In this document: in pieces, positions 28,112-64,000 of the stretch
Layout: the number at the start of each line of letters is the position of its first letter
Position numbering within the stretch: the stretch's first letter is position 1
Assembly (NCBI GenBank): GCA_002269645.1
Contig: NIVC01000103.1
Location: 186,001 to 250,000, forward strand
Origin: Macrostomum lignano
Taxonomy: Eukaryota
Direction of reading: 5' to 3'
DNA: 64,000 bases
Notes under the pieces: model-generated
What the model was told of the DNA's origin: nothing
Databases searched by the model: none
What the model saw: only the letters and a program-made list of their open reading frames with translations
Translations under genes and position numbers: made by a program

Positions 28112-31100
28112 ATGGCAGAGGCGGCTGCACCTGATGGCGATCTAGTTGACCTGGAGCATAAGCAGGTGAATACTTGAAATTTATCATATTCGTATATCTG
28201 AGTCTTTATGTCACTGCTTTACCACGCGGTTCACGCGTCCCAAGTCCACCCCCTGGGTTAAATTTCCAGACACCGGAAGCAGAAGCGCCACAGGCAACTG
28301 AGGCACCGGTGGAGACGTCCAAAGCTCGACTGTCCATGGTTGACGCTGTGCCAGATGACGAAGACGAGCTGCTGATGAAGCTGCAAGACGATGCTGCGTA
28401 CGATACGGATTTGGAAGGTTTGTAAAGTTTGGGAATTGTTGATGTGGCCATCAAAGGGACAGTGAGGCGGGACATCAAAGGGACAGTGAGGCGGGACATC
28501 AAAGAGACAGTGAGGCGGGACATCAAAGGGACAGTGAGGCGGGACATCAAAGGGACAGTGAGGCGGGACATCAAATGGACAGTGAGGCGGGACATCAAAG
28601 GGACAGTGAGGCGGGACATCAAAGAGACAGTGAGGCAGGACATCAAAGGGACAGTGAAGCGGGACATCAAAGGGACAGTGAGGCGGGACATCAAAGGGAC
28701 AGTGAGGTGGGACATCAAAGAGACAGTGAGGCAGGACATCAAAGGGACAGTGAGGCGGGACATCAAAGAGATAGTGAGGCGGGACATCAAAGGGACAGTG
28801 AAGCGGGACATCAAAGGGACAGTGAGGCGGGACATCAAAGGGACAGTCAGGCGGGACATCAAAGAGATAGTGAGGCGGGACATCAAAGGGACAGTGAAGC
28901 GGGACATCAAAGGGACAGTGAGGCGGGACATCAAAGGGACAGTCAGGCGGAACATCAAAGGGACAGTGAGGCGGGACATCAAAGGGACAGTGAGGCGGAA
29001 CATCAAATGGACAGTGAGGCGAGATATCAAAGGAACAGTGAGGCGGGAGATCAAAGAGGCGGGACATCAAAGGGACAGTGAAGCGGGACATGAATTCAGC
29101 TAAAGTGTGCTCAATAAACCCTTGCAGAAGCGCCTAAGAAAGAGCGGCCGGACATAACGGGAGTGAGACGCGGCGTGTACTTGAAGCGCTGCTCGGAGGT
29201 CGGCGCGCATCCGGTTGGCCGCTACGTGAAGCGGCCAGCAGACAGGAAGCTGCGACTGTCGCACCGCTGCATGTCAGCCAAAGAGGCGGACGCCATCACG
29301 TACGCGCTGGAGCTGTCGCCGGACGTGGCGGATCTCAACATGCGCGACAATCGGCTGGGGCCGGAGGGCTTCGATTTTGTCAACTGTCTGCTAAAGGACA
29401 ATGTGCACTTGTATAAACTGGTGAGCTGATGGGCTGAGTTGGGTTCCTATCTAGTTCCAGTAGAGTAGGCAGCTGATGTAGAGTAGGCAGCTGATGTAGA
29501 GTAGGTAGCTGATGTAGAGTAGGCAGCTAGAATAGAGTAGGCAGCTGATGTAGAGTAGGCAGCTGATGTAGAGTAGGCAGCTGATGTAGAGTAGGCAGCT
29601 GATGTAGAGTAGGCAGCTGATGTAGAGTAGGCAGCTGATGTAGAGTAGGCAGCTAGAATAGAGTAGGCAGCTGATGTAGAGTAGGCAGCTGATGTAGAGT
29701 AGGCAGCTGATGTAGAGTAGGCAGCTGATGTAGAGTAGGCAGCTGATGTAGAGTAGGCAGCTGATATAGAGTAGGCAGCTGATGTAGAGTAGGCAGCTGA
29801 TGTAGAGTAGGCAGCTGATGTAGAGTAGGCAGCTGATGTAGAGTAGGCAGCTGATGTAGAGTAGGCAGCTGATGTAGAGTAGGCAGCTGATGTAGAGTAG
29901 GCAGCTGATGTAGAGTAGGCAGCTGATGTAGAGTAGGCAGCTGATGTAGAGTAGGCAGCTGATGTAGAGTAGTCAGCTGATGTAGAGTAGGCAGCTGATG
30001 TAGAGTAGGCAGCTGATGTAGAGTAGTCAGCTAAAGTAGATAGCAGACAGACATGAGAGTACGGGCTCTTAGTTAACCGAATCCTCAGTATCAGTAAAAC
30101 CGCGTCATGCAGTGAAGCCTCTTACCGCAACGCAGAACATCAGCGGCAACGCGCTGGGTCGCGAAGGCATGGCGCAGCTGAAAAGCGCCCTCCTGCGCAA
30201 CAACACCATCTCAGCGTTGGACGCATCCGGCAACGATTTCGACGAGCGGACCGGCCAGGACTGGAAAGAGATCCTGCTGGCCAATGACCGGCTGAGTCAG
30301 CTGAACCTGTCGCACAATCAGCTGGGCAGCGATGGAGCCACAGCTCTGGCCGAGGGCATCAGTGAGTGGCTGCCATTGGGGAGAGGATTGGTCTGGTGCA
30401 GTGACGTTCTCGTGGCGGTTTGTAGCGATTCGGAATGGGATCTATTGCGATTCAGAATGTGGTCTATTGCGATTCGGAATGGGATCTGTTGCGATTCGGA
30501 ATGGGATCTGTTGCGATTCGGAATGGGATCTGTTGCGATTCAGAATGTGGTCTATTGCGATTCGGAATGGGATCTGTTGCGATTCGGAATGGGATCTATT
30601 GCGATTCGGAATGGGATCTGTTGCGATTCAGAATGTGGTCTATTGCGATTCGGAATGGGATCTGTTGCGATTCGGAATGGGATCTGTTGCGATTCGGAAT
30701 GGGATCTATTGCGATTCGGAATGGGATCTGTTGCGATTCAGAATGTGGTCTATTGCGATTCGGAATGGGATCTGTTGCGATTCGGAATGGGATCTGTTGC
30801 GATTCGGAATGGGATCTGTTGCGATTCGGAATGGGATCTGTTGCGATTCGGAATGGGATCTGTTGCGATTCGGAATGGGATCTGTTGCGATTCGGAATGG
30901 GATCTGTTGCGATTCGGAATGGGATCTGTTGCGATTCGGAATGGGATCTATTGCGATTCGGAATGAGATCTGTTGCGATTCGGAATGGGATCTGTTGCGA
31001 TTCGGAATGGGATCTGTTTGCAATTCGGAATGGGATCTATTGCGATACGGAGATGGATCTATTGCGATTCGGAATGGGATCTATTGCAATTCGGAATATT

Positions 31101-34100
31101 GCAATTCGGAGGGTGTCTAATGAAATTCGGAGGGAGATCTATTGCGATTTGGAAGGGTGATTTATTGCAATTCGGAACGGGATCCATTGCAATTTGGAAA
31201 AGCGATTAAGTTTGCGTCCATCCAGCGTCGCATTGCATTTTTTCAGGCGCAAACGATTCTCTGTGCAATCTGAATCTCAGCTGGAACTGCATCCGGCTCA
31301 AGGGCGCGGTGGAGCTGGCCAAGGCTATTCGTGTGAGTTTGCTGCGCTGGCTTGCATGCAGATTATTTGCATTATTCACCAACCACTAACAAAATCTCAC
31401 GCAGGTGAACAAGTCTCTACGCGAGTTGCACCTGCAGTTCAACGGTTTCAGCAGCGAAGGCGCGCTGGAGGTGGCCGCCTCGCTGCTGGAGAACCGGACA
31501 CTCCGGCTGCTGGACCTTAGCGGCAACCGGATCTGGCGTCAGGCCGCTGGGCCCTTCGCCAGAGCGCTCAAGAAGAATAAAAAACTGCGCGTGCTGCGGG
31601 TGAGCAGCTTGCTTCCGGTTATTGTTGTAGGAGGTTATGTGTCTGACTTCCGGTCACTGGAAATGTTGATAGTATGGACTCAATTAAAAATTCTGATTTT
31701 GACATCCGGTCTCGTGAACTGATAGAATGGAACTTCCGGTCACGAGAACTGATAGAATGGAACTTCCGGTCTCGTGAACTGATAGAATGAAACTTCCGGT
31801 CATGTGAACCGATAAAATGGAACTTCCGGTCTCGTGAACTGATAAAATGGAACTTCCGGTCTCGTGAACTGATAGAATGGAACTTCCGGTCTCGTGAACT
31901 GATAAAATGGAACTTCCAGTCACGAGAACTGATAGAATGGAACTTCCGGTCTCGTGAACTGATAAAATGGAACTTCCGGTCTCGTGAACTGATAGAATGG
32001 AACTTCCGGTCTCGTGAACTGATAAAATGGAACTTCCAGTCACGAGAACTGATAGAATGGAACTTCCGGTCTCGTGAACTGATAAAATGAAACTTCCGGT
32101 CATGTGAATCGATAAAATGGAACTTCCGGTCACGAGAATTGATAAAATGTAACTTGAAATGTGAAGGTTGATAGTATGGAATTTCCGGTCACTTGAAATT
32201 TTGATAGCATAGATAACTCCCGGTTACTTAAGGCCGATTAGTATTGAACTTCCGGTCACTTAAAATGCTGATGGCGCAAAACTTCCGGTAAAGTCTAGTA
32301 ACCAAACACCAATCTCAATGCGAATCAATATTTTTCAGTTGCGAACCAACCCGCTGCTAAATGACGGCGTCATGGAGATCCTCAAAGTGTTGCACGCAGA
32401 GGAGCAGATTTCTCTGGAAATGCTGGATGTTGAGGTGAAAATTTTATTGAAATTGTAAGAACCTAAGCATCTAAGAAGCTAAGCATCTAAGAAGCTAAGC
32501 ATCTAAGAAGCTAAGCGTCTAAGAACCTAAGCATCTAAGAACATAAGCGTCTAAGAACCTAAGCAGCTAAGAACATAAGCGTGTAAGAACCTAAGCATCT
32601 AAGAACCTAAGCATCTAAGAACATAAGCGTCTAAGAACCTAAGCATCTAAGAACATAAGCGTCTAAGAACCTAAGCATCTAAGAACCTAAGCATCTAAGA
32701 ACCTAAGCAGCTAAGAACCTAAGGATCTAAGAACATAAGCGTCTAAGAACCTAAGCATCTAAGAACCTAAGCATCTAAGAACCTAAGCAGCTAAGCATCT
32801 AAGAACCGAAGCATCTAACATCCTAAGCATCTAAGAACCTAAGCATCTAAGAACCTAAGCAGCTAAGAACCTAAGCATCTATGAACCTAAGCATCTAAGA
32901 ACCTAAGAATCTAAGAACCTAAGCAGCTAAGCATCTAAGAACCGAAGCATCTAACATCCTAAGCATCTAAGAACCTAAGCATCTATGAATCTAAGCATCT
33001 AAGAACCTAAGCATCTAACATCCTAAGCATCTAAGAACCGAAGCATCTAAGAACATAAGCGTCTAAGAACCTAAGCATCTAAGAACCTAAGCATCTAAGA
33101 ACCTAAGCAGCTAAGAAGCTAAGCATCTAAGAACATAAGCGTCTAAGAACCTAAGCATCTAAGAACCTAAGCATCTACGAACCTAAGCATCTAAGAACCT
33201 AAGCGTCTAAGAAGTTAAGCATCTAAGAACCTAAGCATCTAAGAGCCTAATTAGAACGAATCGACCTTCACTGCATCCAGGACATCACGGTGACCCAGGA
33301 GCTGATGTCGCTCTACCGATCGATTCGAGCCAACAACCCGAAGTTCCGCATCAGAATTCGAACTGTGATCAAGCGAGACGGCACAGTTGAACGCGTGCGC
33401 GATGAATTCAGCACAGAGAATCCGCTGGAGGTGCTGCTGATGTTCATGCAGGAGAAGAACTTGAGGCTGATTGATCTGTTCAAGGTGAGTGCAATGTCAC
33501 GGGACTGCTTGGGCTCTGTGCGGTTCTATACTGAGTTATGATTGAATATAGTTACAGTTATTACTCTGGCCCAGTTGGTTAAATCTGGTCATAGGGGGGC
33601 CGTAGCCCAGCGGTAGCGCAGCTGCTCTGGTGTGCCAGCGACCCAGGCTCGATTCCAAGTGCAGTCACATTAATTTGGGGCTGAATTGGAATCTCGGCTT
33701 GGCTCTGCTCGTGCAATTAACGGCCTTGAGAGCCAACCCCCAAGGCGCAGTGAAGTGTACATGCCTAACAATTGATAAAGTTAGGGCCGCTGTACACTCC
33801 TGTGTGAGTGTGTGCCTGCGTACGTATCCGCGCGCTTGGATGCCTGCTCAGGGGAGTCGGTGGAATGGGCAGCAATGCCTCTCGCCGGTTGTGTGCCTAT
33901 GTCGCCTAAAGTGCGCCAGGGTGCACACAACCCCCCTGCCTCTAATAATAAATAAATAAATCTGGTCATAGTAAGACTCTTTGTGGTTGTGACCATTTTT
34001 GGTCATATAGTGTGGCTATTTGTTGTCATAGTGTGACGTGTGGCTAGTTGTGGTCATAGTGTGGCTATTTGTGGTCATAGTGTGGCTAGTTATGGTCATA

Positions 34101-46634: not shown

Positions 46635-49600
46635 ATGGAGGGTAGTCTAGCTCACATAATTGCTGGCGGGTAAGTAACTTTCTACTTCTTTACACTTTAG
46701 GAAATTAGGACTTATAGGTCTTGTTCTTTATTATTAATATAAACTTCGCTTTCCGGCTTTTTAATCTTACCGTATCTATATACGAGCTATAATATATTGT
46801 GTAGCATTTGAGAACTGGCTATTGACATTTTGCACTGGGGCGGATCCAGGTGGAGCCAAGGGGGCCATGGCCATTTTCTGCATATGATTTGTGAAGATTA
46901 CTGCATATAGTCTAGAGACATAGACATTGGTATAGATTTCCCTAATCCTAGTTGTAGTAGGGGTAAGTAAAGTAGGCTAGGCCTAATTAACAATAATAGA
47001 ACCTAGCCTTGTTGGAATTGGAATAAAGTCTTAAATGTTTCAGGCAGTGTCCAAAGTCCAAAGCACCCTAGAAGATTAGTGGACTTACAAACAAAATCAA
47101 AGCATTAAACATTAGTAGTGGTACTAGACACTTTAGTATAGGGGTTGGCAAACTCTGGCCCTTGATCCAGATCCAGCCTGTGACACCTTTAAGTCTCTCC
47201 TGCAGAATTCTTACTATCTAGCGATGTAAAAGTGGAAAATAAAAAGCTTCTCTTATTTTATTTTAAAAGAATGTAACTTAAATAAATTTATTTAAATAAA
47301 ATCTTTTTAGTTAAAAAAGGCATTTTAACCTAATAAGCAAAATATTGTCAAAAACTTCAATATGAATTCATGAATATGTGCTATATTCTATTGTGAATAT
47401 ATAACATTAAACAGTTAACAAATAGGGAATTTAATGCTATGCACATATGTGCAAGTTCAAAGTTCTAAGATACTTCTATGTCATATTGTTCAAATTTTGA
47501 AGTTATAGTTGCAGTTTTAAATAAACAAATTGCTTTTATTTTTTACCTTTATGAAAGGCTTTGTCTTTAATTTTCAGTATATACATATAATATAGTAAGG
47601 GTTAACAATATATAGTCAAGTAACAAAATTTGTCAACAATATAAAATATAAAAGTGCTAACAAATTTGATGTTAATGAAATTGATAGCTTTGCATATGAC
47701 TACCTAGGACCTTATTGCATGTGGTGCATTTGGTAAATAATCAAATACCATATACATCATTATTATATTATTGTACAATATAGGAATTGTAGGCTTTGCT
47801 AAGTCGAATAACTTTTAGTGATAACATTTAATATTTATTAATTATAAATTCACAAGATATTGATATTGATACTAGGCCTATGCAATTCTCTTTTTTAGTC
47901 TGTCTTTTAGACCCTCTATTGGTCCATTGGAATATAGTGTATGACATATGTTAGATCATACATGCGCAATAGTTGGTCGAGTTGGCCGATCCAGCCGACT
48001 GATTTGGCGGCCAACCAAGGAAGTCGCAAAAATGCCCACCTAAAAAAACAAAAAGTAGTAGTACTAAGTAGCTGATGAGGCATTTTGGCTTTATAAGACA
48101 GTCATAGTTACTCTTACCGTTTACCCAAAATTGCGTTAATTTTGCTTTCGGGTTTTTTTACATGTAATTCGCATTTTTGGCCAAAAACTACGTCGCATTT
48201 TTGTTAAAACTAAGTCACACGGCTGACCGAATTTTGGAGGTTGCGCATGTATGTGTTAGATACATTCAAGTAGCTAGTACTTTGGAAGGATTTGCATTGT
48301 CTTTACCATATATATATAACCTTTAAAAGTATACTGAACACTGACCAAATGCAACTTAGTATTTTGACTAAAAATGGGACTTAGTTTTGTAACCTATGCC
48401 AAAAATAAACTAAGAATTCATTTAATTTGTTGTCAAATGTGTAAAGAATTAAAAATATCCTAAAAAGTTATCAATTTTCATGACCCTTTGTTTACCATCC
48501 ACATTAGGTAGATTGGCTAGGTTAGCTGGCAGTTGTGCATATATATTGGACAGAAAGCATAAGTTTTATCTAAAATCCCAATTGAAATTAAAAAAAATAA
48601 GACTTGTAACCTATTTAAAGCAAATTGTGCAATAGAAATGTAGCAAAATATAACTGTTTAAAATAAGGTTTAAGCTAAACACTTGACAATATGAAACTAT
48701 AATTTAATATTAGAGATTGGATGGGATACTGAACATCTGAAAAAAAATACTTGTAGTACTTGCATCCTGTTCTATAGTCTCATCTTATCATTTAATTGAT
48801 TCTGCCAGGGTTGCTGGTACCACTGGTGCCCTGTTCACTTCACCACTGGAAATTGTGAAGACCCGACTACAGGGCTCAGTGAACACCTGGTCAGGTCCTA
48901 CAGCTGTGCTCAGTACAGCAGGAGCCGGGCCTCAGTCTCAGCTGTTAATTCAACAAGGCGGCTTAGCAGCCCGGCTCAGATATGTGCCCAGCAACCACCT
49001 GTCAATCATGTCCTGCGTTCGTCATATTTACCGGGCCGAGGGCGCTAGGGCGCTGTTTAAAGGCCTCACAATGACCATCGCTGGCGTGCTGCCGTCTCGA
49101 GCAATCTACTTTGGCGCCTACTTTAATGGCCAAGAAATGTTTGCGCCAGCTTACGCCAAGGGCACGCATGGCAACGTGTTTGCCGCCTCGTCATTTGCCA
49201 GCTTCGTGTCGTCCACGCTGACCAATCCGATTTGGTATGTCAAGACCCGGATGCAGCTCGATCAATCGTGAGTCGGACATTTCTTGACTGGCTTTGCTCA
49301 AAATGGCTTTTTTATTGCTGCTTAGCTTGCTATCTGTCGCCTCCCAGATCCTCAGTTGCTGGGCTAGCCTCCCAGATCCTCAGTTGCTGGGCCAGCCTCC
49401 CAGATCCTCAGTTGCTGGGCCAGCCTCCCAGATCCTCAGTTGCTGGGCCAGCCTCCCAGATCCTCAGTTGCTGGGCCAGCCTCCCAGATCCTCAGTTGCT
49501 AGGCCAGCCTCCCAGACCCTTAGTTGCTGGGCGAGCCTCCCAGAGTGTCAGTTGCTGGGCCAGCCTCCCAGATCCTCAGTTGCTAGGCCAGCCTCCCAGA

Positions 49601-52600
49601 TCCTTAGTTGCTGGGCCAGCCTCCCAGATCCTCAGTTGCTGGGCCAGCCTCCCAGATCCTCAGTTGCTAGGCCAGCCTCCCAGATCCTTAGTTGCTGGGC
49701 GAGCCTCTCAGAGTGTCAGTTGCTGGGCCAGCCTCCCAGATCCTCAGTTGCTGGGCCAGCCTCCCAGATCCTCAGTTGCTGGGCCAGCCTCCCAGAGTGT
49801 CAGTTGCTGGGTCATCACAATCACCTTCTCACGTTCTCAGATGTTGGGTTGTCAAGTTGCCCCCTAGTCATGTGGCAGCTCGCTTGAACTTATCTGTTTG
49901 AATTAGAATATGATAATAATTTTTACAGGATTTTTAACGTAGCGAAACGGCTATCCAGGGTTTCCAGGTGCTATCAGTAGTCCAACTGAACTGCAAGTGA
50001 AGTGTACAAAGTGTAACAGGGTTGTTATTGAGCTTTTGGGTCACGCTGTTTAGCTTTTAAGCGAATAGTGAAATGTAAGTTGGAATGCAGAATCGATAAT
50101 TTTCTGCAGTATTTTTACAGAAAACAACCTAATTAGTTTAGAGCAACTTTACTAAGCAAGACCAGGAGACTAGCATGACCGATGTACATTCGATGCTGTC
50201 ACCTGATTCCATTTAGACTAACAAGTTTAACTAATAAAGTTTCCATGCATTAACCGCGTGAAATTTCGCCAAGCTGTTATGAAATTGGGAAAGTCGTATG
50301 CACGTAGCTTTTACAGCTTCTATTTTTAATTAGTGTCTGGCATAGTCTGCCATTATGGCGGGTTTTGGGTTCGTGTACAGAGCAAGTACTGCGTGACCTT
50401 GTTTAACTCTAACTGGGGGTGTCTGGTAATGGTGGTAACTTAAGCTGGGAATTCCCTCGTCACGCAGTATTCTCGTGCTCTTGCATAGTTTGTTGGCTTT
50501 GGTACCTTGCCCTGCTTTGCACTTTTATGCTGTTGTAGTTAGCTGAAGTGAGTCAGTGGCCACTTGTTTGAATTTCGTGTGGAAAGTAGTCTTCAACGCA
50601 ATCAAATATTACCTAGTTAGCAGAGACCTACTAAACCAGAGGGTCACCAGGGACTCACTGAAGAATCTGAGGGTCACCAGGGACTCACTGAAGAATCTGA
50701 GAGTCACCAGGGACTCGCTGAAGAATCTGAGGGTCACCACGGGCTCTCTGAAGAATCTGAGAGGCACCAGGGATTCGCTGAAGAATCTGAGGCTCACCAG
50801 GGACTCTCTGAAGAATCTGAGTGTCACCAGGGATTCGCTGAAGAATCTGAGGGTCACCAGGGACTCGCTGAAGAATCTGAGGGTCACCACGGGCTCTCTG
50901 AAGAATCTGGTGGTAACCAGGAACAATCAGTGAATCGCAGTGACCCAGTGAACAATCAGTGAGTCAGCAGTGACCCAGTGAACAATCAGTGTGCCAGCAG
51001 TGACCCAGTGAGCAATCAGCGAGTCAGCAGTGACCCAGTGAGCAATCAGTGAGTCAGCAGTGACCCAGTGAGCAATCAGTGAGTCAGCGTGACCCAGTGA
51101 GCAATCAGTGAGTCAGCGTGACCCAGTGAGCAATCAGTGAGTCAGCAGTGACCCAGTGAGCAATCAGTGAGTCAGCGTGACCCAGTGAGCAATCAGTGAG
51201 TCAGCAGTGACCCAGTGAACAATCAGTGAGTCAGCAGTGACCAAGTGATCAATCAGTGAGTCAGCAGTGACCCACTAAACAATCAGTGAGTCAGCAGTGA
51301 CCCAGTGAACAATCAGTGTGCCAGCAGTGACCCAGTGAGCAATCAGCGAGTCAGCAGTGACCCAGTGAACAATCAGTGAGTCATCAGTGACCCAGTGAGC
51401 AATCAGTGAGTCAGCAGTGACCCACTAAAGAACGAGTGTTAACAGTGAATTAGCAAATGGAGTCAACTACAGATCTGAACCCATCATTGCATCTCACCAA
51501 TTATCCCCCCAGACCGTCAGCCAAGTCCCTGACAGTGTGGCAGTGCACCGTTGACACCTGGCGTCGTGGCGGCTTCTTCGCCTTCTTCAAAGGCATTCAA
51601 GCCTCCTACATCGGCATAGTGGAGACTTCGCTTCAGTTTGTACTCTACGAGCATCTCAAACGAAGCTTAATGCAAATGTCGCGGGGCGCTGATTCCAGCG
51701 CTAATCGTGATTTGACTTTAACTAGCGCCGACGATGTCCTTTACTGCACTCTTGCTAGCGGCATATCAAAGACTGTGTCCACTGTTACCTGCTATCCGCA
51801 CGGTGAGTTATTGGTTTAATTGCCAAACTGGAAATGTCGGACTGGCATCTTATGAGCTGGCTTTATTAGCGTCAGACATCACTGATACCCTGTTAACCTC
51901 CTCCCCTGACACCTTGTTGACCTCCCTCCCCTCCCCTGACACCTTTTTGACCTCTCTCCCCTCCCCTGACACCTTGTTGACCTCTCCCCCCTCCCCTGAC
52001 ACCTTGTTGACCTCCCTCCCCTCCCCTGACACCTTGTTGACCTCCCTCCCCTCCCCTGACACCTTGTTGACCTCACTCCCCTCCCCTGACACCTTGTTGA
52101 CCTCTCTCCCCTCCCCTGACACCTTGTTGACCTCTCTCCCCTCCCCTGACACCTTGTTGACCTCCCTCCCCTCCCCTGACACCTTGTTGACCTCACTCCC
52201 CTCGCCTGACACCTTGTTGACCTCTCTCCCCTCCCCTGACACCTTTTTGACCTCTCTCCCCTCCCCTGACACCTTGTTGACCTCTCCCCCCTCCCCTGAC
52301 ACCTTGTTGACCTTCCTTCCCTCCCCTGACACCTTGTTGACCTCTCCCCCCTCCCCTGACACCTTGTTGACCTTCCTTCCCTCCCCTGACACCTTGTTGA
52401 CCTTCCCTTCCCTTTCCTGACACCTTTTTGACCTCTCCCCCCCTCCCCTGACACCTTGTTGACCTTCCTCCCCCCCCTGACACCACTGTGGTCTCCCCTC
52501 CCCTGATACCACTGTAGTCTCCCCCCTGACACCATTGTGGTCTCCCCTCCGCTGCGCGGATAGCAGTGTTTCAGTTTCAGTATTCAAATTTAATTTTCAC

Positions 52601-56189: not shown

Positions 56190-56895
56190 TGAATCAGCCT
56201 CTCCGCTCCATCGATACCCATAAATTAGCCTCTCCTCTCCATCAATATCATTGAATCAGCCTCTCTGCTCCATCACCTTGAATCAGCCCCTCGGCTGCAT
56301 CAATATCCTTGAATCAGCCTCTGCTCCATCAATATCATTGAATCAGCCTCTCGGGTCCATCATTTGAATCAACCTCTCTGCTCCATCAATATCATTGAAT
56401 CAGCCTCTCGGGTCCATCATTTGAATCAACCTCTCTGCTCCATCACCTTGAATCAGCCTTTCAGCTCCATCACCTTGAATCAGCCTCTCAGCTCCATCAC
56501 CTTGAATCAGCCTCTCAGCTCCATCACCTTGAATCAGCCTCTCAGCTCCATCACCTTGAATCAGCCTTTCAGCTCCATCACCTTGAATCAGCCTCTCAGC
56601 TCCATCACCTTGAATCAGCCCCTCAGCTCCATTAATATCCTTGAATCAGCCTCTGCTCCATCAATATCCTTGAATCAGCCCCTCAGCTCCATCAATATCC
56701 TTGAATCAGCCTCTGCTCCATCAATATCATTGAATCAGCCTCTGCTCCATCAATATCCTTGAATCAGCCTCTGCTCCATCAATATCATTGAATCAGCCTC
56801 TGCTCCATCAATATCCTTGAATCAGCCTCTGCTCCATCAATATCATTGAATCAGCCTCTGCTCCATCAATATCCTTGGATCGGCCTCTCCGCTCC
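56190..56895. repeat. ~27-bp minisatellite downstream of the neuropeptide gene
   Basis: Units TTGAATCAGCCTCTCAGCTCCATCACC, with CAATATCA variants. Confidence 0.9.
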
Positions 56896-57168
56896 ATCAG
56901 TGCTGAATTCGAAGTCAGTTTATCCAAAAATTTCATGAGTCGTACAGAAAATGAGCGTACAGTAGCTTATGCCTGCGTGAGAGAAATAACTTGCAGCTTA
57001 TTATAGTTTGCCAAGCGCATTACCGCCTCATCAATTGCTGATTAAACAGTTGGTGTATTTTCTCAACCGACAAAACAGGAGCACACAGCGGCGGAGCATA
57101 GCGAATTAAACAGTTTCAATTTATATAGTAGTTTGTCTGCTGTGGAAAATATCTGGCGCAGTGTTCAA

Positions 57169-57483
57169 TCAGCGGGCGCCAGCAGCCGGTCTCCAGACGG
57201 CGCTCTGCCTCTTCTTGCCGAAGCGGAACATCTGGCGCTTGCCGTAGCGAAACATGCCCCGCTTGAGGGCGGACAGGTACTCGGCGCCTGTCATTGGCGA
57301 CGGCTGTTGAGCTGTCCACCACCACGGACGGTGACGGACCGGGGCAGCGGCACGCCAGATGCTTGTTGGACTCTTGACGGGACTCTCCGGTGTGCAGCTG
57401 CAGTTTACAGCGCCGACGGTTAGCAGTGTTGCAACCAGCAGCTGTAGAGCAACTGTGGAACTGGGTCTGGTAAACTCTGGCAT
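57169..57483 (-). CDS. Neuropeptide precursor, FMRFamide-like/RYamide type (predicted GMFRYamide and pQMFRFamide), 104 aa
   Basis: ATG at 57483 is followed by the hydrophobic signal-like MPEFTRPSSTVALQLLVATLLTVGAVNC. The C-terminal region AEYLSAL-KR-GMFRY-G-KR-QMFRF-G-KKR gives two similar peptides, each bounded by dibasic sites and ending in an amidation Gly. Confidence 0.8.
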   Translation of the reverse strand: MPEFTRPSSTVALQLLVATLLTVGAVNCSCTPESPVKSPTSIWRAAAPVRHRPWWWTAQQPSPMTGAEYLSALKRGMFRYGKRQMFRFGKKRQSAVWRPAAGAR

Positions 57484-57949
57484 TCTCGATTGTTCCGTTC
57501 CTGGAAGTCTCAGCGTTGAATCTCTCAAAGCTCTGTGCTCGGCTCTGCTCAACACTTCACTTTTTAAATCGGGGCGCAGAGTTCGGGATTGGCAGCCAAT
57601 CAAACAGAGTGACAGATGGCGGCCTGTGCATAATAATAAAACACATTCTTTGCTTTGTTAATGGCTTCCACATGTTCAACAAATCCAGGCTGTAGAAGTG
57701 GAATTTCAAGTCAACATTACCGGATAATGGACAACTCGGAAAAGCAGCTTTTGGCTCCTTGAGCTCGAGCAGAGAAATGGAAAGGGGCACAATGTGTCTG
57801 GTTTTGATGTTTGTCATGCAATCGTAAAAACCAATGCTTTTAGCTCTGTAATGGCAATGCATGTCTGATCCTCTGCTGCTTGCAGTTCAAATACGCATCT
57901 TTGTGAATTTCTGTCCGGTTTCATTTACTGGCAGGATGGCCAGGAGACC

Positions 57950-58780
57950 ACTTTCAGGTACTTATTGAATGACTAAATTGCAGTTTCAGGCGCTTACTGA
58001 ATGACTAAATTGCAGTTTCAGGCGCTTACTGAATGACTAAATTGCAGTTTCAGGCGCTTACTGAATGACTAAATTGCAGTTTCAGGCGCTTACTGAATGA
58101 CTAAATTGCAGTTTTAGGCGCTTACTGAATGACTAAATTGCAGTTTTAGGCGCTTACTGAATGACTAAATTGCAGTTTCAGGCGCTTACTGAATGACTAA
58201 ATTGCAGTTTTAGGCGCTTACTGAATGACTAAATTGCAGTTTCAGGCGCTTACTGAATGACTAAATTGCAGTTTCAGGCGCTTACTGAATGACTGGAGTG
58301 GAGGTTCAGGTGCTTACTGAATGACTGAAGTGGAGGTTCAGGTGCTTACTGAATGACTGGAGTGGAGGTTCAGGTGCTTACTGAATGACTGGAGTGGAGG
58401 TTCAGGTGCTTACTGAATGACTGGAGTGGAGGTTCAGGTGCTTACTGAATGACTGAAGTGGAGGTTCAGATGGTTACTGAATGACTGAAGTCCAGTTTCA
58501 GGTGCTTACTGAATGACTGGAGTGGAGGTTCAGGTGCTTACTGAATGACTGGAGTGGAGGTTCAGGTGCTTACTGAATGACTGGAGTGGAGGTTCAGGTG
58601 CTTACTGAATGACTGAAGTGGAGGTTCAGATGGTTACTGAATGACTGAAGTCCAGTTTCAGGTGCTTACTGAATGACTGGAGTGGAGGTTCAGGTGCTTA
58701 CTGAATGACTGGAGTGGAGGTTCAGGTGCTTACTGAATGACTGGAGTGGAGGTTCAGGTGCTTACTGAATGACTGAAGTG
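57950..58780. repeat. 32-bp minisatellite, copy 1 (followed by ~105-bp unique tail to ~58890)
   Basis: Units TTCAGG(C/T)GCTTACTGAATGACT + AAATTGCAGT, switching to GGAGTGGAGG units at ~58290. Confidence 0.93.
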
Positions 58781-59199
58781 CACGTGGAGATTTAAATGCT
58801 ACAGAATTCAGAAAAGCTTACTAAATAAACAGGAAATTAGTTTCTGATGTACAAGAAACATGAATTATTAATTAGAAACGTGTATTTATTTAAAACCACG
58901 AGAAGATTAAACTTTCTGCCGGTCAAAGTAAATCTAATTCTATGGCTAAATTGGTAGTATCCGTTCTTGCCGGATGACTATTCTAGGTTTGGACTCTACG
59001 ATCAAACTTACCTGCGCATACAGAGCAGAGCGTACGGCTCGTACACTATACAGAAACTGTGACCAGCGAAACTAAAATAAATTATCTGAATTTGAATTTG
59101 AATTTATCTGAATTTGAGCAAAAGACAATAGCCAAAAAAGTAAACAGAAAGGATGCAAACATACGAGGTAGTTAGTTTTGTATGTTGGAAAGTGGGTCT

Positions 59200-60180
59200 A
59201 TCCAGTCGATACTTCAACGCCGCGAATGCCAGCGCTTGGAAGCAATCGAACAAACTGGACATCCTGGACATCGGCTGCGAAATAAACTGAGCCCCAGGAA
59301 CTTTTTAGCACCTTTTCGTAGGTCTGGGCTGGGCAGGAATGTTGGAAGTAAGTTTGTTAGAATTTTTTTTTGTTTCCCTTTTTTTCTTACCTGGGATTTT
59401 TCTCCGGAAAATGCTGCTCAGGGACTGCAACTGTTTGCAGCATGGAAGTCGGTCGCTTCCTGCCATTTCCAGTTCGCTCTACCAAATCGCGGATGCTGGC
59501 TTCGAGATATTTGATGAAGGTATTCTGGCCACCACAGTTGCAGTACAGAACCCAAGCGTTTTGCACCATTTGAAGGCACATACGCAAACCCAGCTAGTGG
59601 AAACATTTTGTTGTTTTTCTGCCGGCATCATAGGGCTGCAGGGTGCCGTCCAGCATGTCCACTCCACCCATGCAGCGATTGTAAGTTAGCACACTGCGGC
59701 TCTTCTGCACTGCCACATGCTGACCAGCTCGATTGGTCTTGACTTTCTCGGCCTTTGACGCAACGATCTTCGTGTCCAGCAAACACAAGGTCTTGACTCC
59801 ACTCTGCTTTTTCTCGACAGCCTTCACAATCAGAACACGTCTCTTCCTAGCAAAAGCTACATTATTCGGAGCCACTACAGTCTGCCGAAGCTGAGCCGGA
59901 ACTCCTCGGTCTGGCCTCACGGTGCCCGTCAGGAACGTTGAATGGTCGATTAGGAACTGGGACAACCTGTATGATGTAAACCATGATGTCGGTAAATATT
60001 CTGTACCCTTGGTCTAGAATGTCCTTGGTCAGCTCAGCTACATGTACGATTCGCTCACTGAGAGAACGACAAACTTCCGATTTTCTTCTGGAGTTGAGTG
60101 CACAAGGAATTGTTGGAATGTACTGTTTAAAACGAATTCTCAATTTTAGCAGCTTCGCCATCGGCAAACTCCCGTCCTTC
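59200..60180 (-). mobile_element. Degenerate piggyBac-family transposase remnant
   Basis: Frameshifted fragments RFKQYIP, DILDQGYRIFTD and SVLTYNRCMGGVDMLDGTLQPYDAGRKTTK (piggyBac YN..MGGVD..D...Y...RK..KW motif), plus a broken Cys-rich C-terminus near 59230-59300. No TTAA-CCC termini were found. Confidence 0.8.
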
Positions 60181-60694
60181 CTCGCCGTCAGGCCCTTCTA
60201 TGGTTGGAGGATTGTCATCCAGAGCTTCTTCGATACCAACCTCCTCGCCAGGCTCCTCGTCTATTAGGAGGATTCGGGGCTTGCTTCACTTTCAGAGGTC
60301 ATTTAGTCGATCCCAGAGGCAGACGCCATGTACTGTGGGTTATCAGTGAGTAAATACTGACAAATTTAGCGAGAAAAGGCTAACAAAAAGATAGTGAAAG
60401 TGTTACTGTAAGAAAGCTATAGTCTTACTGCAAAGAGGACTTACTGTCTGCGCACAGTTTCCTATGGTAAGCACTGCATACCAAACAGGCAGCAAGTGAG
60501 ACTGCTTTACTGGCTAAAGCGATAGAACTGTTCATTACCTTCCCGTCTAGCGTGTCAGTTTGAGCCAAGCTGGATCAGTAAGCCTAGCCGGCAGGAATGG
60601 GAGTGGCATCCTATACCAGAAAAAATCTATGGTAAGCACTGCTTACCAAGCAGCCGGGAACAGACAACTTATGGATTCTGGATGACCAGCAGAG

Positions 60695-61690
60695 CCGTTT
60701 CAGGTGCTTACTGAATGACTGGAGTGGAGGTTCAGGTGCTTACTGAATGACTGAAGTGGAGGTTCAGGTGCTTACTGAATGACTGAAGTGGAGGTTCAGG
60801 TGCTTACTGAATGACTGAAGTGGAGGTTCAGGTGCTTACTGAATGACTGAAGTCCAGTTTCAGATGCTTACTGAATGACTGAAGTCCAGTTTCAGATGCT
60901 TACTGAATGACTGAAGTCCAGTTTCAGGTGCTTACTGAATAACTGAAGTGGAGGTTCAGGTGCTTACTAAATGACTGAAGTGGAGGTTCAGGTGCTTACT
61001 GAATGACTGGAGTGGATGTTCAGGTGCTTACTGGATGACTGAAGTGGATGTTCAGGTGCTTACTGAATGACTGGAGACCAGTTTTAGATGCTTACTGAAT
61101 GACTGAAGTGGAGGTTCAGGTGCTTACTGAATGACTGAAGTCCAGTTTCAGGTGCTTACTGAATAACTGAAGTGGAGGTTCAGGTGCTTACTGAATGACT
61201 GAAGTGGAGGTTCAGGTGCTTACTGAATTACTGAAGTGGAGGTTCAGGTGCTTACTGAATGACTGAAGTCCAGTTTCAGATGCTTACTGAATGACTGAAG
61301 TCCAGTTTCAGATGCTTACTGAATGACTGAAGTCCAGTTTCAGATGCTTACTGAATGACTGAAGTCCAGTTTCAGATGCTTACTGAATGACTGAAGTCCA
61401 GTTTCAGATGCTTACTGAATGACTGAAGTGGAGTTTCAGATGCTTACTGAATGACTAAAGTAGAGGTTCAGGTGCTTACTGAATGACTGAAGTGGAGGTT
61501 CAGGTGCTTACTGAATGACTGAAGTGGAGTTTCAGATGCTTACTGAATGGCTGAAGTGGAGGTTCAGGTGCTTACTGAATGACTGAAGTGGAGGTTCAGG
61601 TGCTTACTGAATGACTGAAGTGGAGTTTCAGATGCTTACTGAATTACTGAAGTGGATGTTCAGATGCTTACTGAATGACTGAAGTGGAGA
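60695..61690. repeat. 32-bp minisatellite, copy 2 (followed by the same ~105-bp tail to ~61790)
   Basis: Same unit as 57950-58780. Both arrays end in GTGGAGATTTAAATGCTACAGAATTCAGAAAAGCTTACTAAATAAACAGGAAATTAGTTTCTGATGTACAAGAAACATGAATTATTAATT. Confidence 0.93.
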
Positions 61691-61960: not shown

Positions 61961-63405
61961 TCACAGGTCCATCGTTAGCGGGACCGAACTTTCAATTCCA
62001 GCTCCATTGCTGAAAAATTTCAGAAGATCAAATATAATAAGAGATATCGAATGAAAGAATAGATTAAAAGCGCAGATATTTCTACTACAAGTAGACTAAT
62101 TAGGACCTTACCCGGCCTCTAATTTCTCTTCGATGGTCGCAGCCAGCAAGAGTTTCGGGCTGAGCGTGACGGCCGCAGCAGATTTGCCGAACTTTGAGCC
62201 TCTCTGGAACATGTATCGAACTATTAATTAGAAGTAATAAGGTAAGCTTGCTAGCTTAGGTTCGCCTAGGGTTGTAGTGCCGTTCACAGCCGTGAGGGCC
62301 AGCCTCCAAGGCACAGAGAGCGTACATGCCTGATTAATAAACAGTCAGGGCGATTGTACACCCTGTGTGAGCGGTGTGTATGAGTGCGTGTTTGCGTAAA
62401 GTATTGGAGTGCTTGCATGCTCAGGAGTCAGTGGAATGAGCAGCATTGATTATCATAATTAAATCAAACTCAACCACCAGATCTACTTGTCCCATGCACA
62501 TACCATGTCAGACACTACAGGTGCCGACTGTCTTCTAAGACCGAGTCGATAGGGAGCAGGGGGAGCTGCGTCGATTGTCTGAAATTCGGTTTTGAATGTG
62601 TATAATTGAAAACATAATTTTTTCATAGCAGGTGCGAACCTGTCTCTCTCCCTGCATCCACTGTCTCTCCCTGCATCCACTGTCCCTCTCCCTGCATCCA
62701 CTGTCTCCTTCTGCATCCACTGTCGCTCTCCCTGCATCCACTGTCGCTCTCCCTGCATTCACTGTCTCTCTCACTACATCCACTGTCCCTCTCCCTGCAT
62801 CCACTGTCTCTCTCACTACATCCACTGTCGCTCTCCCTGCATCCACTGTCTCTCCCTGCATCCACTGTCTCTCTCCCTGCATCCACTGTCCCTCTCCCTG
62901 CATCCACTGTCCCTCTCCCTGCATTCACTGTCTCTCCCTGCATCCACTGTACCTCTCCCTGCATCCACTGTCCCTCTCCCTGCATTCACTGTCTCTCTCA
63001 CTACATCCACTGTCCCTCTCCCTGCATTCACTGTCTCTCCCTGCATTCACTGTCTCTCCCTGCATCCACTGTCTCTCTCCCTGCATCCACTGTCTCTCTC
63101 CCTGCATCCGCTGCTCAGTTGGAACCTTGAACTCCTCCTCCGTGGCATCGTCGCTGACGACAGGCGGGGCCGAGTCCCGCTGACTCGGCAGGGTGTCCAG
63201 CGGCGGCAGCGGCGGCGCCGAAGGCTCCTTTGGCTCCGGCAGGCGTCGGCGCACCCGAATGTGGACAACACCGTCGGCGACCACAGCGTCGACAAGTCGA
63301 CGAGCGACCTCTTCGGTGCTGGACGATGCCGCAGAACTGGGTGACTGGGAGAGGGCGGGCTGGCCGTCCACCGACAAGATTTCGTCGCCAGGGTGAATTC
63401 CGCAT
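61961..63405 (-). CDS. 3' exons of a PDZ-domain protein (5' part outside window)
   Basis: Exon 63405-63126 encodes the PDZ C-terminal half CGIHPGDEILSVDGQ...VARRLVDAVVADGVVHIRVRR. In-phase candidate exons follow at 62578-62504, 62203-62112 and 62009-61961, ending SSVPLTMDL*. The downstream exon chain is inferred from splice signals and phase only. Confidence 0.62.
62640..63105. repeat. ~21-23-bp minisatellite in PDZ gene intron
   Basis: Units CTCCCTGCATCCACTGTCTCT. They generate the MQGERQW-type ORFs. Confidence 0.9.
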
Positions 63406-63523: not shown

Positions 63524-63975
63524 GTGGCAGGTAAGGGAGGGAGGTGGCTGGGTAAGGGATTGAGGTGGTGGGGTAAGGGAGTGAGGTGGCTGGGTAAGGG
63601 AGTGAGGTGGCTGGGTAAGGGAGTGAGGTGGTTGGGTAAGGGATTGAGGTGGTGGGGTAAGGGAGTGAGGTGGTGGGGTAAGGGAGTGAGGTGGCGGGGT
63701 AAGGGAGTGAGGTGGCGGGGTAAGGGAGTGAGGTGGTGGGGTAAGGGAGTGAGGTGGCGGGGTAAGGGAGTGAGGTGGTTGGGTAAGGGAGTGAGGTGGC
63801 GGGGTAAGGAAGTGAGGTGGTTGGGTAAGGGAGTGAGGTGGCGGGGTAAGGGAGTGAGGTGGTTGGGTAAGGGAGTGAGGTGGTTGGGTAAGGGAGTGAG
63901 GTGGTTGGGTAAGGGAGTGAGGTGGTTGGGTAAGGGAGTGAGGTGATTGGGTAAGGGAGTGAGGTGGTGGGGCTA
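63524..63975. repeat. 21-bp G-rich minisatellite
   Basis: Units GGGTAAGGGAGTGAGGTGG(T/C)(T/G). Confidence 0.92.
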
Positions 63976-64000
63976 GGGAAACGTTTTAGGCGCGGATTTA

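What the first reader, a model, noticed from the sequence alone, without database searches (positions are those of the whole stretch)
57169..57483. Compact neuropeptide precursor predicting GMFRYamide and pyroGlu-MFRFamide
Seen: a single coding exon with a signal-like N-terminus and KR-GMFRY-G-KR-QMFRF-G-KKR. Established: dibasic cleavage plus a C-terminal Gly yields amidated peptides, and an N-terminal Gln cyclises to pyroglutamate. Flatworm and mollusc FaRPs end in -IRFa/-MRFa/-FRFa. An MFR[YF]amide pair, one RYamide and one RFamide, is not one I recognise. The preceding EYLSALKR also echoes the YYSALRH helix of NPY/NPF, hinting at a truncated NPF-related origin (speculative). Such short genes between repeats are easily missed by annotation.
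Basis: partly seen in the sequence, partly recalled or inferred. Interest (0 to 1): 0.7.

Follow-up and report, generated by a model that had tools for sequence, protein, structure and literature searches.

The report
Flatworm sNPF-type (npp-4-like) neuropeptide gene
This is a real, tiny single-exon neuropeptide gene of the flatworm Macrostomum lignano predicted to yield GMFRYamide and (pyro)QMFRFamide; it is a new, unusually compact member of an already known family (flatworm npp-4, the spiralian LFRFamide/short-neuropeptide-F type), not a new kind of peptide.

Summary
On the minus strand, 57483→57169 is a 104-codon ATG-to-TGA ORF with a signal-like N-terminus and KR-GMFRY-G-KR-QMFRF-G-KKR. 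It is not chance. The amidation/cleavage motif occurs once in the window's six frames, versus 0.01 per simulated 64 kb. The ORF is a GC island. Against a homeologous copy, dN/dS is 0.14 in this frame only, and the peptide block shows only synonymous changes. The genome is Macrostomum lignano. Two sister copies are already in GenBank as 'hypothetical protein' (PAA50885.1, PAA69204.1), from an RNA-seq-based annotation. The RFamide/RYamide pairing is not new. Schmidtea mediterranea npp-4 (DAA33926.1) ends KR-GSVFRY-GKR-QSVFRY-G and also carries xFRFamides, with peptides confirmed by mass spectrometry. It is the entry Yañez-Guerra et al. 2020 list as the planarian sNPF-type precursor. Cephalopod LFRFamide precursors mix FRFa and FRYa too. 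The 'truncated NPF' idea failed a profile test. Verdict: a new member of a known kind. The exact MFR[YF]amide peptides were not found in the searchable literature, but McVeigh 2009 and Koziol 2016 could not be read. Interest is modest.

The parts
57169..57483 (-). Complete single-exon CDS (104 codons + TGA) of the neuropeptide precursor
   Evidence: 96% identical to PAA50885.1, whose CDS is one 315-nt block. dN/dS 0.14 in this frame only. GC 62.5% against 40-45% in the flanks.
57400..57483 (-). Predicted signal peptide (residues 1 to ~25-28): n-region MPEFTRPSST, h-region VALQLLVATLLTVGAV, candidate cleavage VGA|V or VNC|S
   Evidence: Hydropathy and the -3/-1 rule. A heuristic only, since SignalP was not available. 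The one substitution here (V23A) is conservative.
57265..57399 (-). Pro/Trp-rich spacer (approximately residues 29-73, ...SCTPESPVKSPTSIW...RPWWWTAQQPSP...AEYLSAL)
   Evidence: Apart from V23A in the signal peptide, all amino-acid differences among the three copies fall here (R44Q, V49A, P53L, P63L, T65A). This fits a weakly constrained linker.
57244..57264 (-). KR + GMFRY + G: first peptide unit (residues 74-80 plus Gly81 as amide donor), giving GMFRY-NH2
   Evidence: Sequence. Identical in three copies, with one synonymous change CGC/CGT at R79. Aligns with KR-GSVFRY-G of Smed-npp-4.
57217..57243 (-). GKR + QMFRF + G: second peptide unit (residues 81-89), giving QMFRF-NH2 or pQMFRF-NH2
   Evidence: Sequence. 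Invariant in three copies. Aligns with GKR-QSVFRY-G of Smed-npp-4.
57172..57216 (-). KKR cleavage site + C-terminal tail QSAVWRPAAGAR
   Evidence: Sequence. Amino-acid-invariant in three copies, with a synonymous AGA/CGA change at R98. No amidation signal and no cysteines.
57561..57600 (-). Putative core promoter: ATTGG...CCAAT palindrome (57600-57588) and TATA-like TTTAAAAA (57568-57561), about 80 nt upstream of the ATG
   Evidence: The partial GenBank model of copy g1 begins at the equivalent of window 57522, i.e. ~40 nt downstream of the TATA-like box. There is no ATG between it and 57483 (read). This is an inference: the flanks are ~92-94% conserved throughout, so conservation does not single these boxes out.
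56900..57168 (-). Probable 3'UTR / downstream unique sequence up to the 29-bp minisatellite. No canonical AATAAA; variants TATAAA (57125) and AATAAG (57002)
   Evidence: The poly(A) site is not determined here.

Best explanation
Window 57483-57169 (minus strand) is one of at least three near-identical copies of a Macrostomum lignano gene (Mlig023008 family) encoding a 104-aa preproneuropeptide of the flatworm npp-4 type. That type is the platyhelminth representative of the spiralian LFRFamide / short-neuropeptide-F (sNPF) family. Inferred mechanism: (1) the hydrophobic N-terminus directs the protein into the secretory pathway and is removed around residue 25-28; (2) prohormone convertase (PC2-type) cuts after K74R75, K82R83 and K90K91R92; (3) a carboxypeptidase trims the basic residues; (4) peptidylglycine alpha-amidating monooxygenase uses G81 and G89 to amidate, giving GMFRY-NH2 and QMFRF-NH2, and the latter may cyclise to pyroGlu. 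The peptides are released from neurons and act on rhodopsin-type GPCRs of the sNPF/NPY-receptor group. By analogy with flatworm FaRPs and with sNPF/LFRFamide in other protostomes, they would modulate muscle, feeding or energy-related behaviour. Shown here: the ORF, its motifs, purifying selection, copy structure and sequence relationship to npp-4. Inferred: signal cleavage, processing, amidation, pyroGlu, neuronal expression, receptor and physiology.
For: The ORF and motif are exactly as described. The motif is far beyond chance and unique in the window, and the N-terminus is signal-like. Window copy versus GenBank copy g2: 14 nt differences, 9 at codon position 3, dN/dS 0.143, the lowest of six frames, binomial p 3e-4. 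Over residues 66-104 there are only 2 changes, both synonymous. A third copy (g1) also keeps the block. The three loci are colinear, with the same Mito_carr neighbour. GenBank gene models in assembly NIVC01 derive from an RNA-seq genome-guided transcriptome (Wudarski 2017), so transcripts exist for g1/g2. Smed-npp-4 has the same size class (110 aa), a signal peptide and mixed xFRFa/xFRYa units, with MS-verified peptides and expression in cephalic ganglia and pharynx. BLASTP gives KRG-MFRYGKRQ-MFRFG vs KRGSVFRYGKRQSVFRYG, 13/18 identical, pairwise E 4e-5. hhalign against the npp-4/LFRFamide alignment gives E 2.6e-4 and score 29, against score 18 for the NPY family. The exact npp-4 sequence is DAA33926.1, the accession listed as 'sNPF-type, Schmidtea mediterranea' by Yañez-Guerra 2020. 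Lophotrochozoan sNPFs are 5-6 residues ending RY/RFamide, and the Platynereis ones were first called RYamide (Thiel 2021). Mollusc LFRFamides activate the oyster sNPF receptor (Zatylny-Gaudin & Favrel 2014). A profile of the block retrieves VFRYa/VFRFa/LFRWa precursors with the Pro-rich ...PFRFG end typical of spiralian sNPF/RYa, and no FMRFamide precursors.
Against: Similarity to npp-4 is confined to ~18 residues that consist largely of processing signals (KR, G, GKR) plus FR[FY]. The signal peptide and spacer share nothing, so orthology rather than convergence cannot be proven from sequence. HMMER over 1.84 billion representatives found no significant relative outside M. lignano. Met at position -4 and five-residue length are not seen in the npp-4/LFRFamide peptides I could read. 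The Pro-rich terminal PFRFamide peptide of trochozoan sNPF precursors is absent, though it is absent in Smed-npp-4 too. Pfam has no model that detects even the known members. No SignalP/NeuroPred run, no peptide, no expression pattern and no receptor data were available. Transcript support is for the sister copies; the window's own allele is not on record.
Confidence: 0.78

Rival explanations
1. It is a genuine amidated-peptide precursor but not an npp-4/sNPF orthologue. On this view it is a Macrostomum-lineage FaRP-like gene whose FR[FY]-G-KR units resemble npp-4 by convergence, or through descent from another RFamide gene such as the YIRFamide/FLP type.
For: Similarity is limited to the short peptide block. 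There are no detectable orthologues in other taxa. The spacer and tail are unrelated to Smed-npp-4. MFRF/MFRY with Met at -4 was not seen in the family members read.
Against: The order and details match the last two npp-4 units (G...FRY-GKR-Q...FR[FY]-G), beyond the generic RFamide signal. Both species are flatworms with precursors of the same size class. The profile built with it retrieves sNPF/RYa-type rather than FMRFamide-type precursors. The F-R-[FY] core is the npp-4/GNFFRFamide signature rather than the [YF]-I-R-F of flatworm FLPs.
Confidence: 0.13
2. It is a truncated or derived NPF/NPY-family precursor. EYLSALKR would be the remnant of the NPY C-terminal helix, and a longer ...EYLSALKRGMFRY-NH2 peptide would be the real product.
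For: EYLSAL loosely resembles the [RN]YL[RK]xL of planarian NPFs. The region after the signal peptide is Pro-rich. NPY/NPF and sNPF/PrRP systems are regarded as ancient paralogues (Yañez-Guerra 2020).
Against: hhalign probability is 3.6% and only GxxR[FY]GKR is aligned. There is no RxR[FY]amide or GRPRF end. A canonical KR site splits the would-be peptide. It is 52-55 residues from the signal cleavage to Tyr80, against 36-40 in NPFs. There was no Pfam hormone_3 hit. MAFFT instead places GAEYLSALKR where relatives carry an additional xxFRFGKR unit.
Confidence: 0.04
3. It is not a functional secreted-peptide gene: either a fortuitous ORF in a transcribed GC-rich island, or a decaying duplicate.
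For: The flanks are nearly as conserved as the ORF between copies (92-94% vs 95.6%), so conservation alone proves little. There is no canonical AATAAA downstream. The window's copy is not itself annotated.
Against: The substitution pattern is strongly biased to synonymous sites in this frame only. The reading frame is intact in three copies, with an invariant peptide block. The joint occurrence of a signal-like N-terminus (6% of ORFs) and a tandem amidation motif (0 in 100 simulations) argues against chance.
Confidence: 0.04

Closest known systems
Schmidtea mediterranea neuropeptide precursor-4 (Smed-npp-4, DAA33926.1 / UniProt E3CTL2; family named by McVeigh et al. 2009, peptidomics in Collins et al. 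2010; listed as sNPF-type by Yañez-Guerra et al. 2020)
   Same: [quoted passage not shown] Both carry short peptides with an F-R-[F/Y]-amide core flanked by KR/GKR, with RFamide and RYamide units in one precursor. The terminal pair G..FRY-GKR-Q..FR[FY]-G is 13/18 identical.
   Different: There are two units instead of five. The peptides are 5 residues (x-M-F-R-[FY]) rather than 6-7 (xx-[V/A]-F-R-[FY]), with Met rather than Val/Ala before the Phe. The first unit follows a long Pro/Trp-rich spacer rather than sitting right after the signal peptide. A 12-residue C-terminal tail follows KKR, whereas npp-4 ends at the last Gly.
Mollusc LFRFamide precursors (= molluscan sNPF; e.g. Crassostrea, Lymnaea, Sepia; Argonauta hians GAB1599637.1)
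   Same: Multiple short x-[L/V/I/F]-F-R-[F/Y]-amide peptides separated by GKR, with FRFa and FRYa mixed in cephalopods. This was the best profile match. Oyster LFRFamides are ligands of an sNPF-type receptor.
   Different: These precursors are much longer with more copies. They carry a characteristic Pro-rich final peptide (...PHTPFRFa / ...THPFRFa) that is absent here. They have Leu rather than Met.
Annelid 'RYa' precursor (Platynereis), re-annotated as sNPF
   Same: Five- to six-residue peptides ending RY/RFamide (Thiel 2021). The environmental relatives retrieved by the profile carry VFRYa / VFRFa / LFRWa units.
   Different: It shares the Pro-rich C-terminal peptide with other trochozoans (Conzelmann 2013), which is not present here. 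The Platynereis sequence itself was not available to me for alignment.
GNFFRFamide (Moniezia expansa), one of the four FaRPs isolated biochemically from flatworms
   Same: A short flatworm peptide with the same F-R-F-amide end. Collins et al. treat npp-4 as its relative.
   Different: It is a hexapeptide with Phe, not Met, at -4. Its precursor was not examined here.
Flatworm NPF / planarian npy-1 to npy-11 (NPY superfamily)
   Same: An RF/RY-amide end followed by GKR, and a small precursor.
   Different: NPFs are a single ~36-40-aa peptide directly after the signal peptide, ending GRPRFamide. There is no profile similarity beyond the amidation site.

Membership tests
Flatworm npp-4 / spiralian LFRFamide-sNPF-type precursor | [quoted passage not shown] | tested here: met
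   The protein is 104 aa with an uncharged 16-residue hydrophobic core at residues 11-26, small residues at -3/-1, and Arg6 in the n-region. This is a heuristic only; SignalP was not available.
Flatworm npp-4 / spiralian LFRFamide-sNPF-type precursor | Two or more short (5-7 aa) peptides with a hydrophobic-F-R-[F/Y] C-terminus, each followed by Gly and a di/tribasic site | tested here: met
   KR-GMFRY-G-KR-QMFRF-G-KKR. Compare SSVFRFa, GSVFRYa and QSVFRYa in Smed-npp-4 and NSLFRFa, SSVFRYa in Argonauta.
Flatworm npp-4 / spiralian LFRFamide-sNPF-type precursor | Detectable sequence similarity to a named member | tested here: met
   BLASTP against Smed-npp-4 gives 13/18 identical, pairwise E 4e-5. 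hhalign against npp-4 + Argonauta gives E 2.6e-4, probability 42.5%. The similarity is restricted to the peptide block and is too short to reach significance in database-wide searches.
Flatworm npp-4 / spiralian LFRFamide-sNPF-type precursor | Pro-rich final peptide (...P-x-x-P-F-R-F-amide) shared by trochozoan sNPF/RYa/LFRFamide precursors | tested here: not met
   The tail is QSAVWRPAAGAR, with no RF-G. The feature is also absent from Smed-npp-4, so it does not define the flatworm branch. It is present in Argonauta and in P0008, P0012-P0014.
Flatworm npp-4 / spiralian LFRFamide-sNPF-type precursor | Mature amidated peptides exist in vivo | not testable with these tools
   This needs LC-MS/MS. 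Predicted [M+H]+ values are 672.329, 727.371 and 710.344.
Flatworm npp-4 / spiralian LFRFamide-sNPF-type precursor | Neuronal expression | not testable with these tools
   Smed-npp-4 is expressed in cephalic ganglia and pharynx. No expression data for Mlig023008 were found.
Flatworm npp-4 / spiralian LFRFamide-sNPF-type precursor | Peptides activate an sNPF-type GPCR | not testable with these tools
   This has been shown only for oyster LFRFamides (cited). To my knowledge from the papers read, no flatworm npp-4 receptor pairing has been reported.
NPY/NPF family | A single 36-40-residue peptide immediately after the signal peptide | tested here: not met
   It is 52-55 residues from the predicted signal cleavage to Tyr80, interrupted by K74R75. 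Planarian NPFs are shown for comparison.
NPY/NPF family | C-terminal R-x-R-[F/Y]-amide (GRPRFamide in flatworms) | tested here: not met
   The ends are M-F-R-Y and M-F-R-F, against the invariant R-P-[RY]-[FR]-GKR in alignment A2.
NPY/NPF family | Profile similarity over the helical region | tested here: not met
   hhalign A1 vs A2 gives probability 3.6% over 12 columns covering only the amidation site. There was no Pfam hit (weak hits may be filtered).
Luqin / RYamide family | Conserved pair of cysteines in the C-terminal part of the precursor (established knowledge of the family; review PMC7041311 listed, not read in detail) | tested here: not met
   There is no cysteine downstream of residue 30.
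FMRFamide / flatworm YIRFamide (FLP) family | Peptides ending [F/Y]-[M/I/L]-R-F-amide | tested here: not met
   The core here is M-F-R-[FY], with an aromatic residue at -3. The block profile did not retrieve FMRFamide precursors. The spp-11 sequence itself was not aligned.

The most novel reading that the evidence does not exclude
The compact Macrostomum precursor preserves, next to its sNPF-type pentapeptides, a vestige of the NPY/NPF helix ([E/N]-Y-L-x-x-L; compare NYEQLL in the Smed-npp-4 spacer and RNYLRKL in planarian NPFs). That would be sequence-level evidence, from an early-branching rhabditophoran, for the proposed common origin of the NPF and sNPF precursors. A milder variant is that MFRYamide and MFRFamide are a previously undescribed Met-type sNPF pair with distinct receptor preferences.
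Probability: 0.06. Interest if true: 0.6.

Novelty: new member of a known kind. Interest (0 to 1): 0.3.

Why it matters
It gives the regenerative model flatworm M. lignano, which is transgenic- and RNAi-tractable, a named, testable sNPF-type/npp-4 ligand gene where GenBank currently has only 'hypothetical protein'. Macrostomorpha branch early within Rhabditophora. A minimal two-peptide precursor with one RYamide and one RFamide helps tie together the flatworm 'FRFamide' (npp-4), annelid 'RYa' and mollusc LFRF/LFRYamide names as one family. It also supplies ligands for deorphanising flatworm NPY/sNPF-like receptors, which are of interest as anthelmintic targets in parasitic relatives. It does not change the current picture of neuropeptide evolution.

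Tried and rejected
(1) Database homology with the full precursor found only M. lignano copies. This covered the 5.8-billion word-indexed search and full HMMER over 1.84 billion representatives. The one extra hit, P0002 (E 9.5e-4), is a tandem-repeat protein from a metagenome contig with no signal peptide or amidation sites, and I judged it spurious.
(2) The exact-sequence look-up of the window's protein found nothing on record.
(3) Pfam gave no hit for the candidate, for Smed-npp-4 or for the Argonauta precursor, so it is uninformative here.
(4) Literature searches for MFRFamide, MFRYamide, GMFRY, QMFRF and Mlig023008 found nothing relevant.
(5) McVeigh et al. 2009, which named npp-4 and mined Macrostomum ESTs, is not held under its DOI or PMC id. 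I therefore could not rule out that an M. lignano npp-4 entry is already tabulated there.
(6) The NPF-remnant hypothesis was tested by profile-profile alignment and rejected.
(7) There is no second copy or pseudogene of the unit elsewhere in the window.
(8) Opposite-strand and other-frame ORFs over the same DNA (57133-57423 +, 57359-57661 +, 57116-57325 -) were rejected. Those frames have stops and/or dN/dS of 0.24-4.0.
(9) I tried to place the environmental relatives taxonomically, but the contigs carry no organism label.

Full report
1. What is in the sequence. The finding's coordinates are right, but the gene is on the minus strand. It runs from ATG at 57483 to TGA at 57171-57169, 104 codons: MPEFTRPSSTVALQLLVATLLTVGAVNCSCTPESPVKSPTSIWRAAAPVRHRPWWWTAQQPSPMTGAEYLSALKRGMFRYGKRQMFRFGKKRQSAVWRPAAGAR. 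The window is animal DNA at about 45% GC. It holds a 15-EGF-domain gene, a cold-shock/Y-box domain, an NCBP2-like RRM, LRRs and many minisatellites. The only database relatives identify the organism as the free-living flatworm Macrostomum lignano.

2. More than chance. The pattern [KR][KR]-x3-8-R[FYW]-G-[KR][KR] occurs exactly once in the six-frame translation of the 64-kb window, and that occurrence is the tandem pair. One hundred first-order Markov simulations gave 0.01 single hits per window and no tandem hit. The N-terminus has a 12-residue window with mean Kyte-Doolittle hydropathy of 2.47 and no charge, followed by small -3/-1 residues. Only 5 of 87 ATG-started ORFs of at least 60 aa in the window look like that. 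The ORF is a compositional island, 62.5% GC against 40-45% in its flanks.

3. Evidence that it is a constrained, expressed gene. GenBank assembly NIVC01 (Mlig_3_7) holds two sister copies. These are PAA50885.1 (BOX15_Mlig023008g2, 104 aa, a single 315-nt CDS) and PAA69204.1 (g1, a 5'-partial model). The g2 locus is colinear with the window over at least 15 kb at 88-95% identity. The g2 and g1 loci both have the same mitochondrial-carrier neighbour, and g2 also has a PDZ gene upstream. These are homeologous or allelic copies, as expected for this partly duplicated genome, which has 180 Mb in blocks at least 95% identical (Wudarski 2017). Window versus g2: 14 nucleotide differences in 315, nine at third codon positions. 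Nei-Gojobori dN/dS is 0.143 in the proposed frame, the lowest of the six frames, and the deficit of non-synonymous changes has binomial p = 3e-4. One amino-acid difference among the three copies lies in the signal peptide (V23A) and the other five in the spacer (R44Q, V49A, P53L, P63L, T65A). From residue 66 to the stop there are only two changes, both synonymous. The flanks are themselves 92-94% identical, so it is the type of substitution, not the level of identity, that carries the argument. The GenBank models were produced from an RNA-seq-based, genome-guided transcriptome, so transcripts exist for the g1/g2 copies. The window's own allele is not on record.

4. Gene anatomy. The unit is a 1.05-kb unique island (56900-57952) between a 29-bp x25 minisatellite (56190-56899) and a 32-bp x26 minisatellite (57953-58782). 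Upstream of the ATG are an ATTGG...CCAAT palindrome (57600-57588) and a TATA-like TTTAAAAA (57568-57561). The partial g1 model begins at the equivalent of 57522, about 40 nt downstream of the TATA-like box, and there is no other ATG before 57483. Downstream there is no AATAAA, only TATAAA (57125) and AATAAG (57002). Promoter and poly(A) assignments are inferences.

5. What it is. The key comparison came from the supplementary data of Collins et al. 2010. Schmidtea mediterranea neuropeptide precursor-4 (Smed-npp-4, 110 aa) reads MNSLSITIFVLSILVSWAQSEQKRSSVFRFGKRDQ...ENKRSVAFRFGKRRGVAFRFGKRGSVFRYGKRQSVFRYG. SSVFRFamide, RGVAFRFamide and QSVFRYamide were detected by mass spectrometry, and expression includes the cephalic ganglia and pharynx. 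Collins et al. describe npp-4 as the relative of the classical flatworm 'FRFamide' GNFFRFamide. So a small flatworm precursor mixing RFamide and RYamide peptides with an F-R-[F/Y] core is already known.

The Macrostomum block aligns with the last two npp-4 units, including the leading Gly and Gln: KRG-MFRYGKRQ-MFRFG against KRGSVFRYGKRQSVFRYG, 13/18 identical, pairwise E 4e-5. The exact npp-4 sequence is accession DAA33926.1. That is the entry Yañez-Guerra et al. 2020 list as the 'sNPF-type' precursor of S. mediterranea.

The same family is called LFRFamide in molluscs, where the peptides are ligands of the oyster sNPF-type receptor, and an LFRYamide set exists in Lottia. In Platynereis it was first called 'RYa' and later re-annotated as sNPF, with peptides of five to six residues ending RY/RFamide. 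Searching with Smed-npp-4 returned an Argonauta precursor that mixes NSLFRFa, SSVFRYa, TLFRFa, TIFRYa... and ends with PHTPFRFa. A profile of the peptide blocks retrieved unannotated precursors with VFRYa/VFRFa/LFRWa units and the ...PDQPHVPFRFG end, not FMRFamide precursors.

6. The NPF idea. I aligned six planarian NPY-superfamily precursors from the same supplement and compared profiles. The Macrostomum alignment matches them with probability 3.6% over 12 columns, and those columns are just G-x-x-R-[FY]-GKR. EYLSALKR is not aligned. Against the npp-4/LFRFamide alignment the score is higher: 29.3 against 18.1, E 2.6e-4, probability 42.5%. The defining NPF features are absent: a single 36-40-aa peptide next to the signal peptide, and a GRPRFamide / RxR[FY]amide end. 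MAFFT places GAEYLSALKR in the columns where relatives have one more xxFRFGKR unit. The stretch could therefore just as well be a decayed copy. Both readings remain speculative.

7. Mechanism (inferred from established prohormone biochemistry). Signal peptidase cuts near residue 25-28. A PC2-type convertase cuts after KR75, KR83 and KKR92. Carboxypeptidase trims the basic residues, and PAM converts the C-terminal Gly to an amide. The products are GMFRY-NH2 and QMFRF-NH2, plus a spacer peptide and the tail QSAVWRPAAGA(R). PyroGlu formation on QMFRF-NH2 is plausible but not assured. The mass reported for planarian QSVFRYamide (797.43) equals the un-cyclised form (calculated 797.418). The receptor is expected in the sNPF/NPY-like rhodopsin GPCR group. 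The physiology (neuromuscular or feeding-related modulation) is by analogy only.

8. Differences from known members. There are only two units. The peptides are pentapeptides with Met before the Phe, where the members I could read have Val/Ala/Leu/Ile/Phe. There is a long Pro/Trp-rich spacer (…HRPWWWTAQQ…) and a conserved non-amidated tail. Literature searches for MFRFamide, MFRYamide, GMFRY and QMFRF found nothing relevant. However, McVeigh 2009 and Koziol 2016, the two papers most likely to list a Macrostomum npp-4, could not be read.

9. Verdict. The claim of an unrecognised peptide type is not supported, and neither is the NPF echo. This is a new, compact member of the flatworm npp-4 / spiralian sNPF (LFRFamide, RYa) family, currently labelled 'hypothetical protein'. 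Novelty: new member of a known kind. Interest is about 0.3. No step had to be referred.

Noticed in passing
window 58783-60698 (ORF 59594-59965, minus strand): About 1.9 kb is present here but absent from the homeologous locus L001. It is bracketed by two copies of the same 32-bp minisatellite (57953-58782 and 60699-61689). It contains a piggyBac-type transposase remnant (Pfam DDE_Tnp_1_7, E 3.6e-7). It looks like a transposon insertion accompanied by duplication of the array.
   Followed up: partly
window 13652-15700 (minus strand): A 682-aa uninterrupted ORF with 15 EGF / calcium-binding EGF domains (Delta/Jagged-type hits) and a hydrophobic C-terminal stretch. It includes a nearly perfect internal duplication of one EGF unit ([38 protein letters not shown] twice).
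   Followed up: partly
window 1793-2344 (+), 6142-6354 (-), 30112-30400 (+): Exons encoding a cold-shock/Y-box domain, an NCBP2-like RRM and RNI-type LRRs. In each case the mechanical ORF runs on into an adjacent minisatellite, giving long spurious extensions.
   Followed up: partly
window-wide, e.g. 4877-6113, 11228-11875, 28206-29103, 30400-31160, 49232-49887, 51734-52587, 56190-56899, 62640-63113, 63530-63979: There is a very high density of 21-32-bp minisatellite arrays that stay open in several frames on both strands. Most of the long ORFs listed for the window are such artefacts. Related arrays recur at distant positions: the 49.3-49.8 kb array matches 5.4-6.1 kb.
   Followed up: no
L001 (NIVC01003543.1) 10001-10315 and L002 (NIVC01001340.1) 3001-3357: Two further copies of the gene exist. 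g1 and g2 differ by only two nucleotides, both Pro-to-Leu changes in the spacer of g1 (P53L, P63L). The window copy differs from g2 by 14. This suggests one older and one very recent duplication or allelic split.
   Followed up: yes
proteins P0007-P0014; loci L003 (Logan SRR31840193), L004 (ENA ERZ22147071, 2.6-Mb contig), L005 (ENA ERZ25070167): Unannotated sNPF/'RYa'-like precursor fragments sit in public metagenome or run assemblies from unidentified animals. Several have the ...PDQPHVPFRFG terminal peptide. P0011 carries KR-GNSFRF-GKR-GSAFRY-GKR-Q, the unit closest to the Macrostomum one.
   Followed up: partly
window 57265-57294 (minus strand; residues 64-73, MTGAEYLSAL): In the multiple alignment this stretch falls in the columns where Smed-npp-4 and the Argonauta precursor carry an additional xxFRFGKR unit. 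It may be a degenerated third peptide copy. The Smed-npp-4 spacer has a vaguely similar NYEQLL.
   Followed up: partly
window 57172-57207 (minus strand; tail QSAVWRPAAGAR): The C-terminal tail after KKR is invariant at the protein level in all three copies despite a synonymous change. It starts with Gln, so a further pyroGlu-capped, non-amidated peptide may be produced. No relative was found.
   Followed up: no
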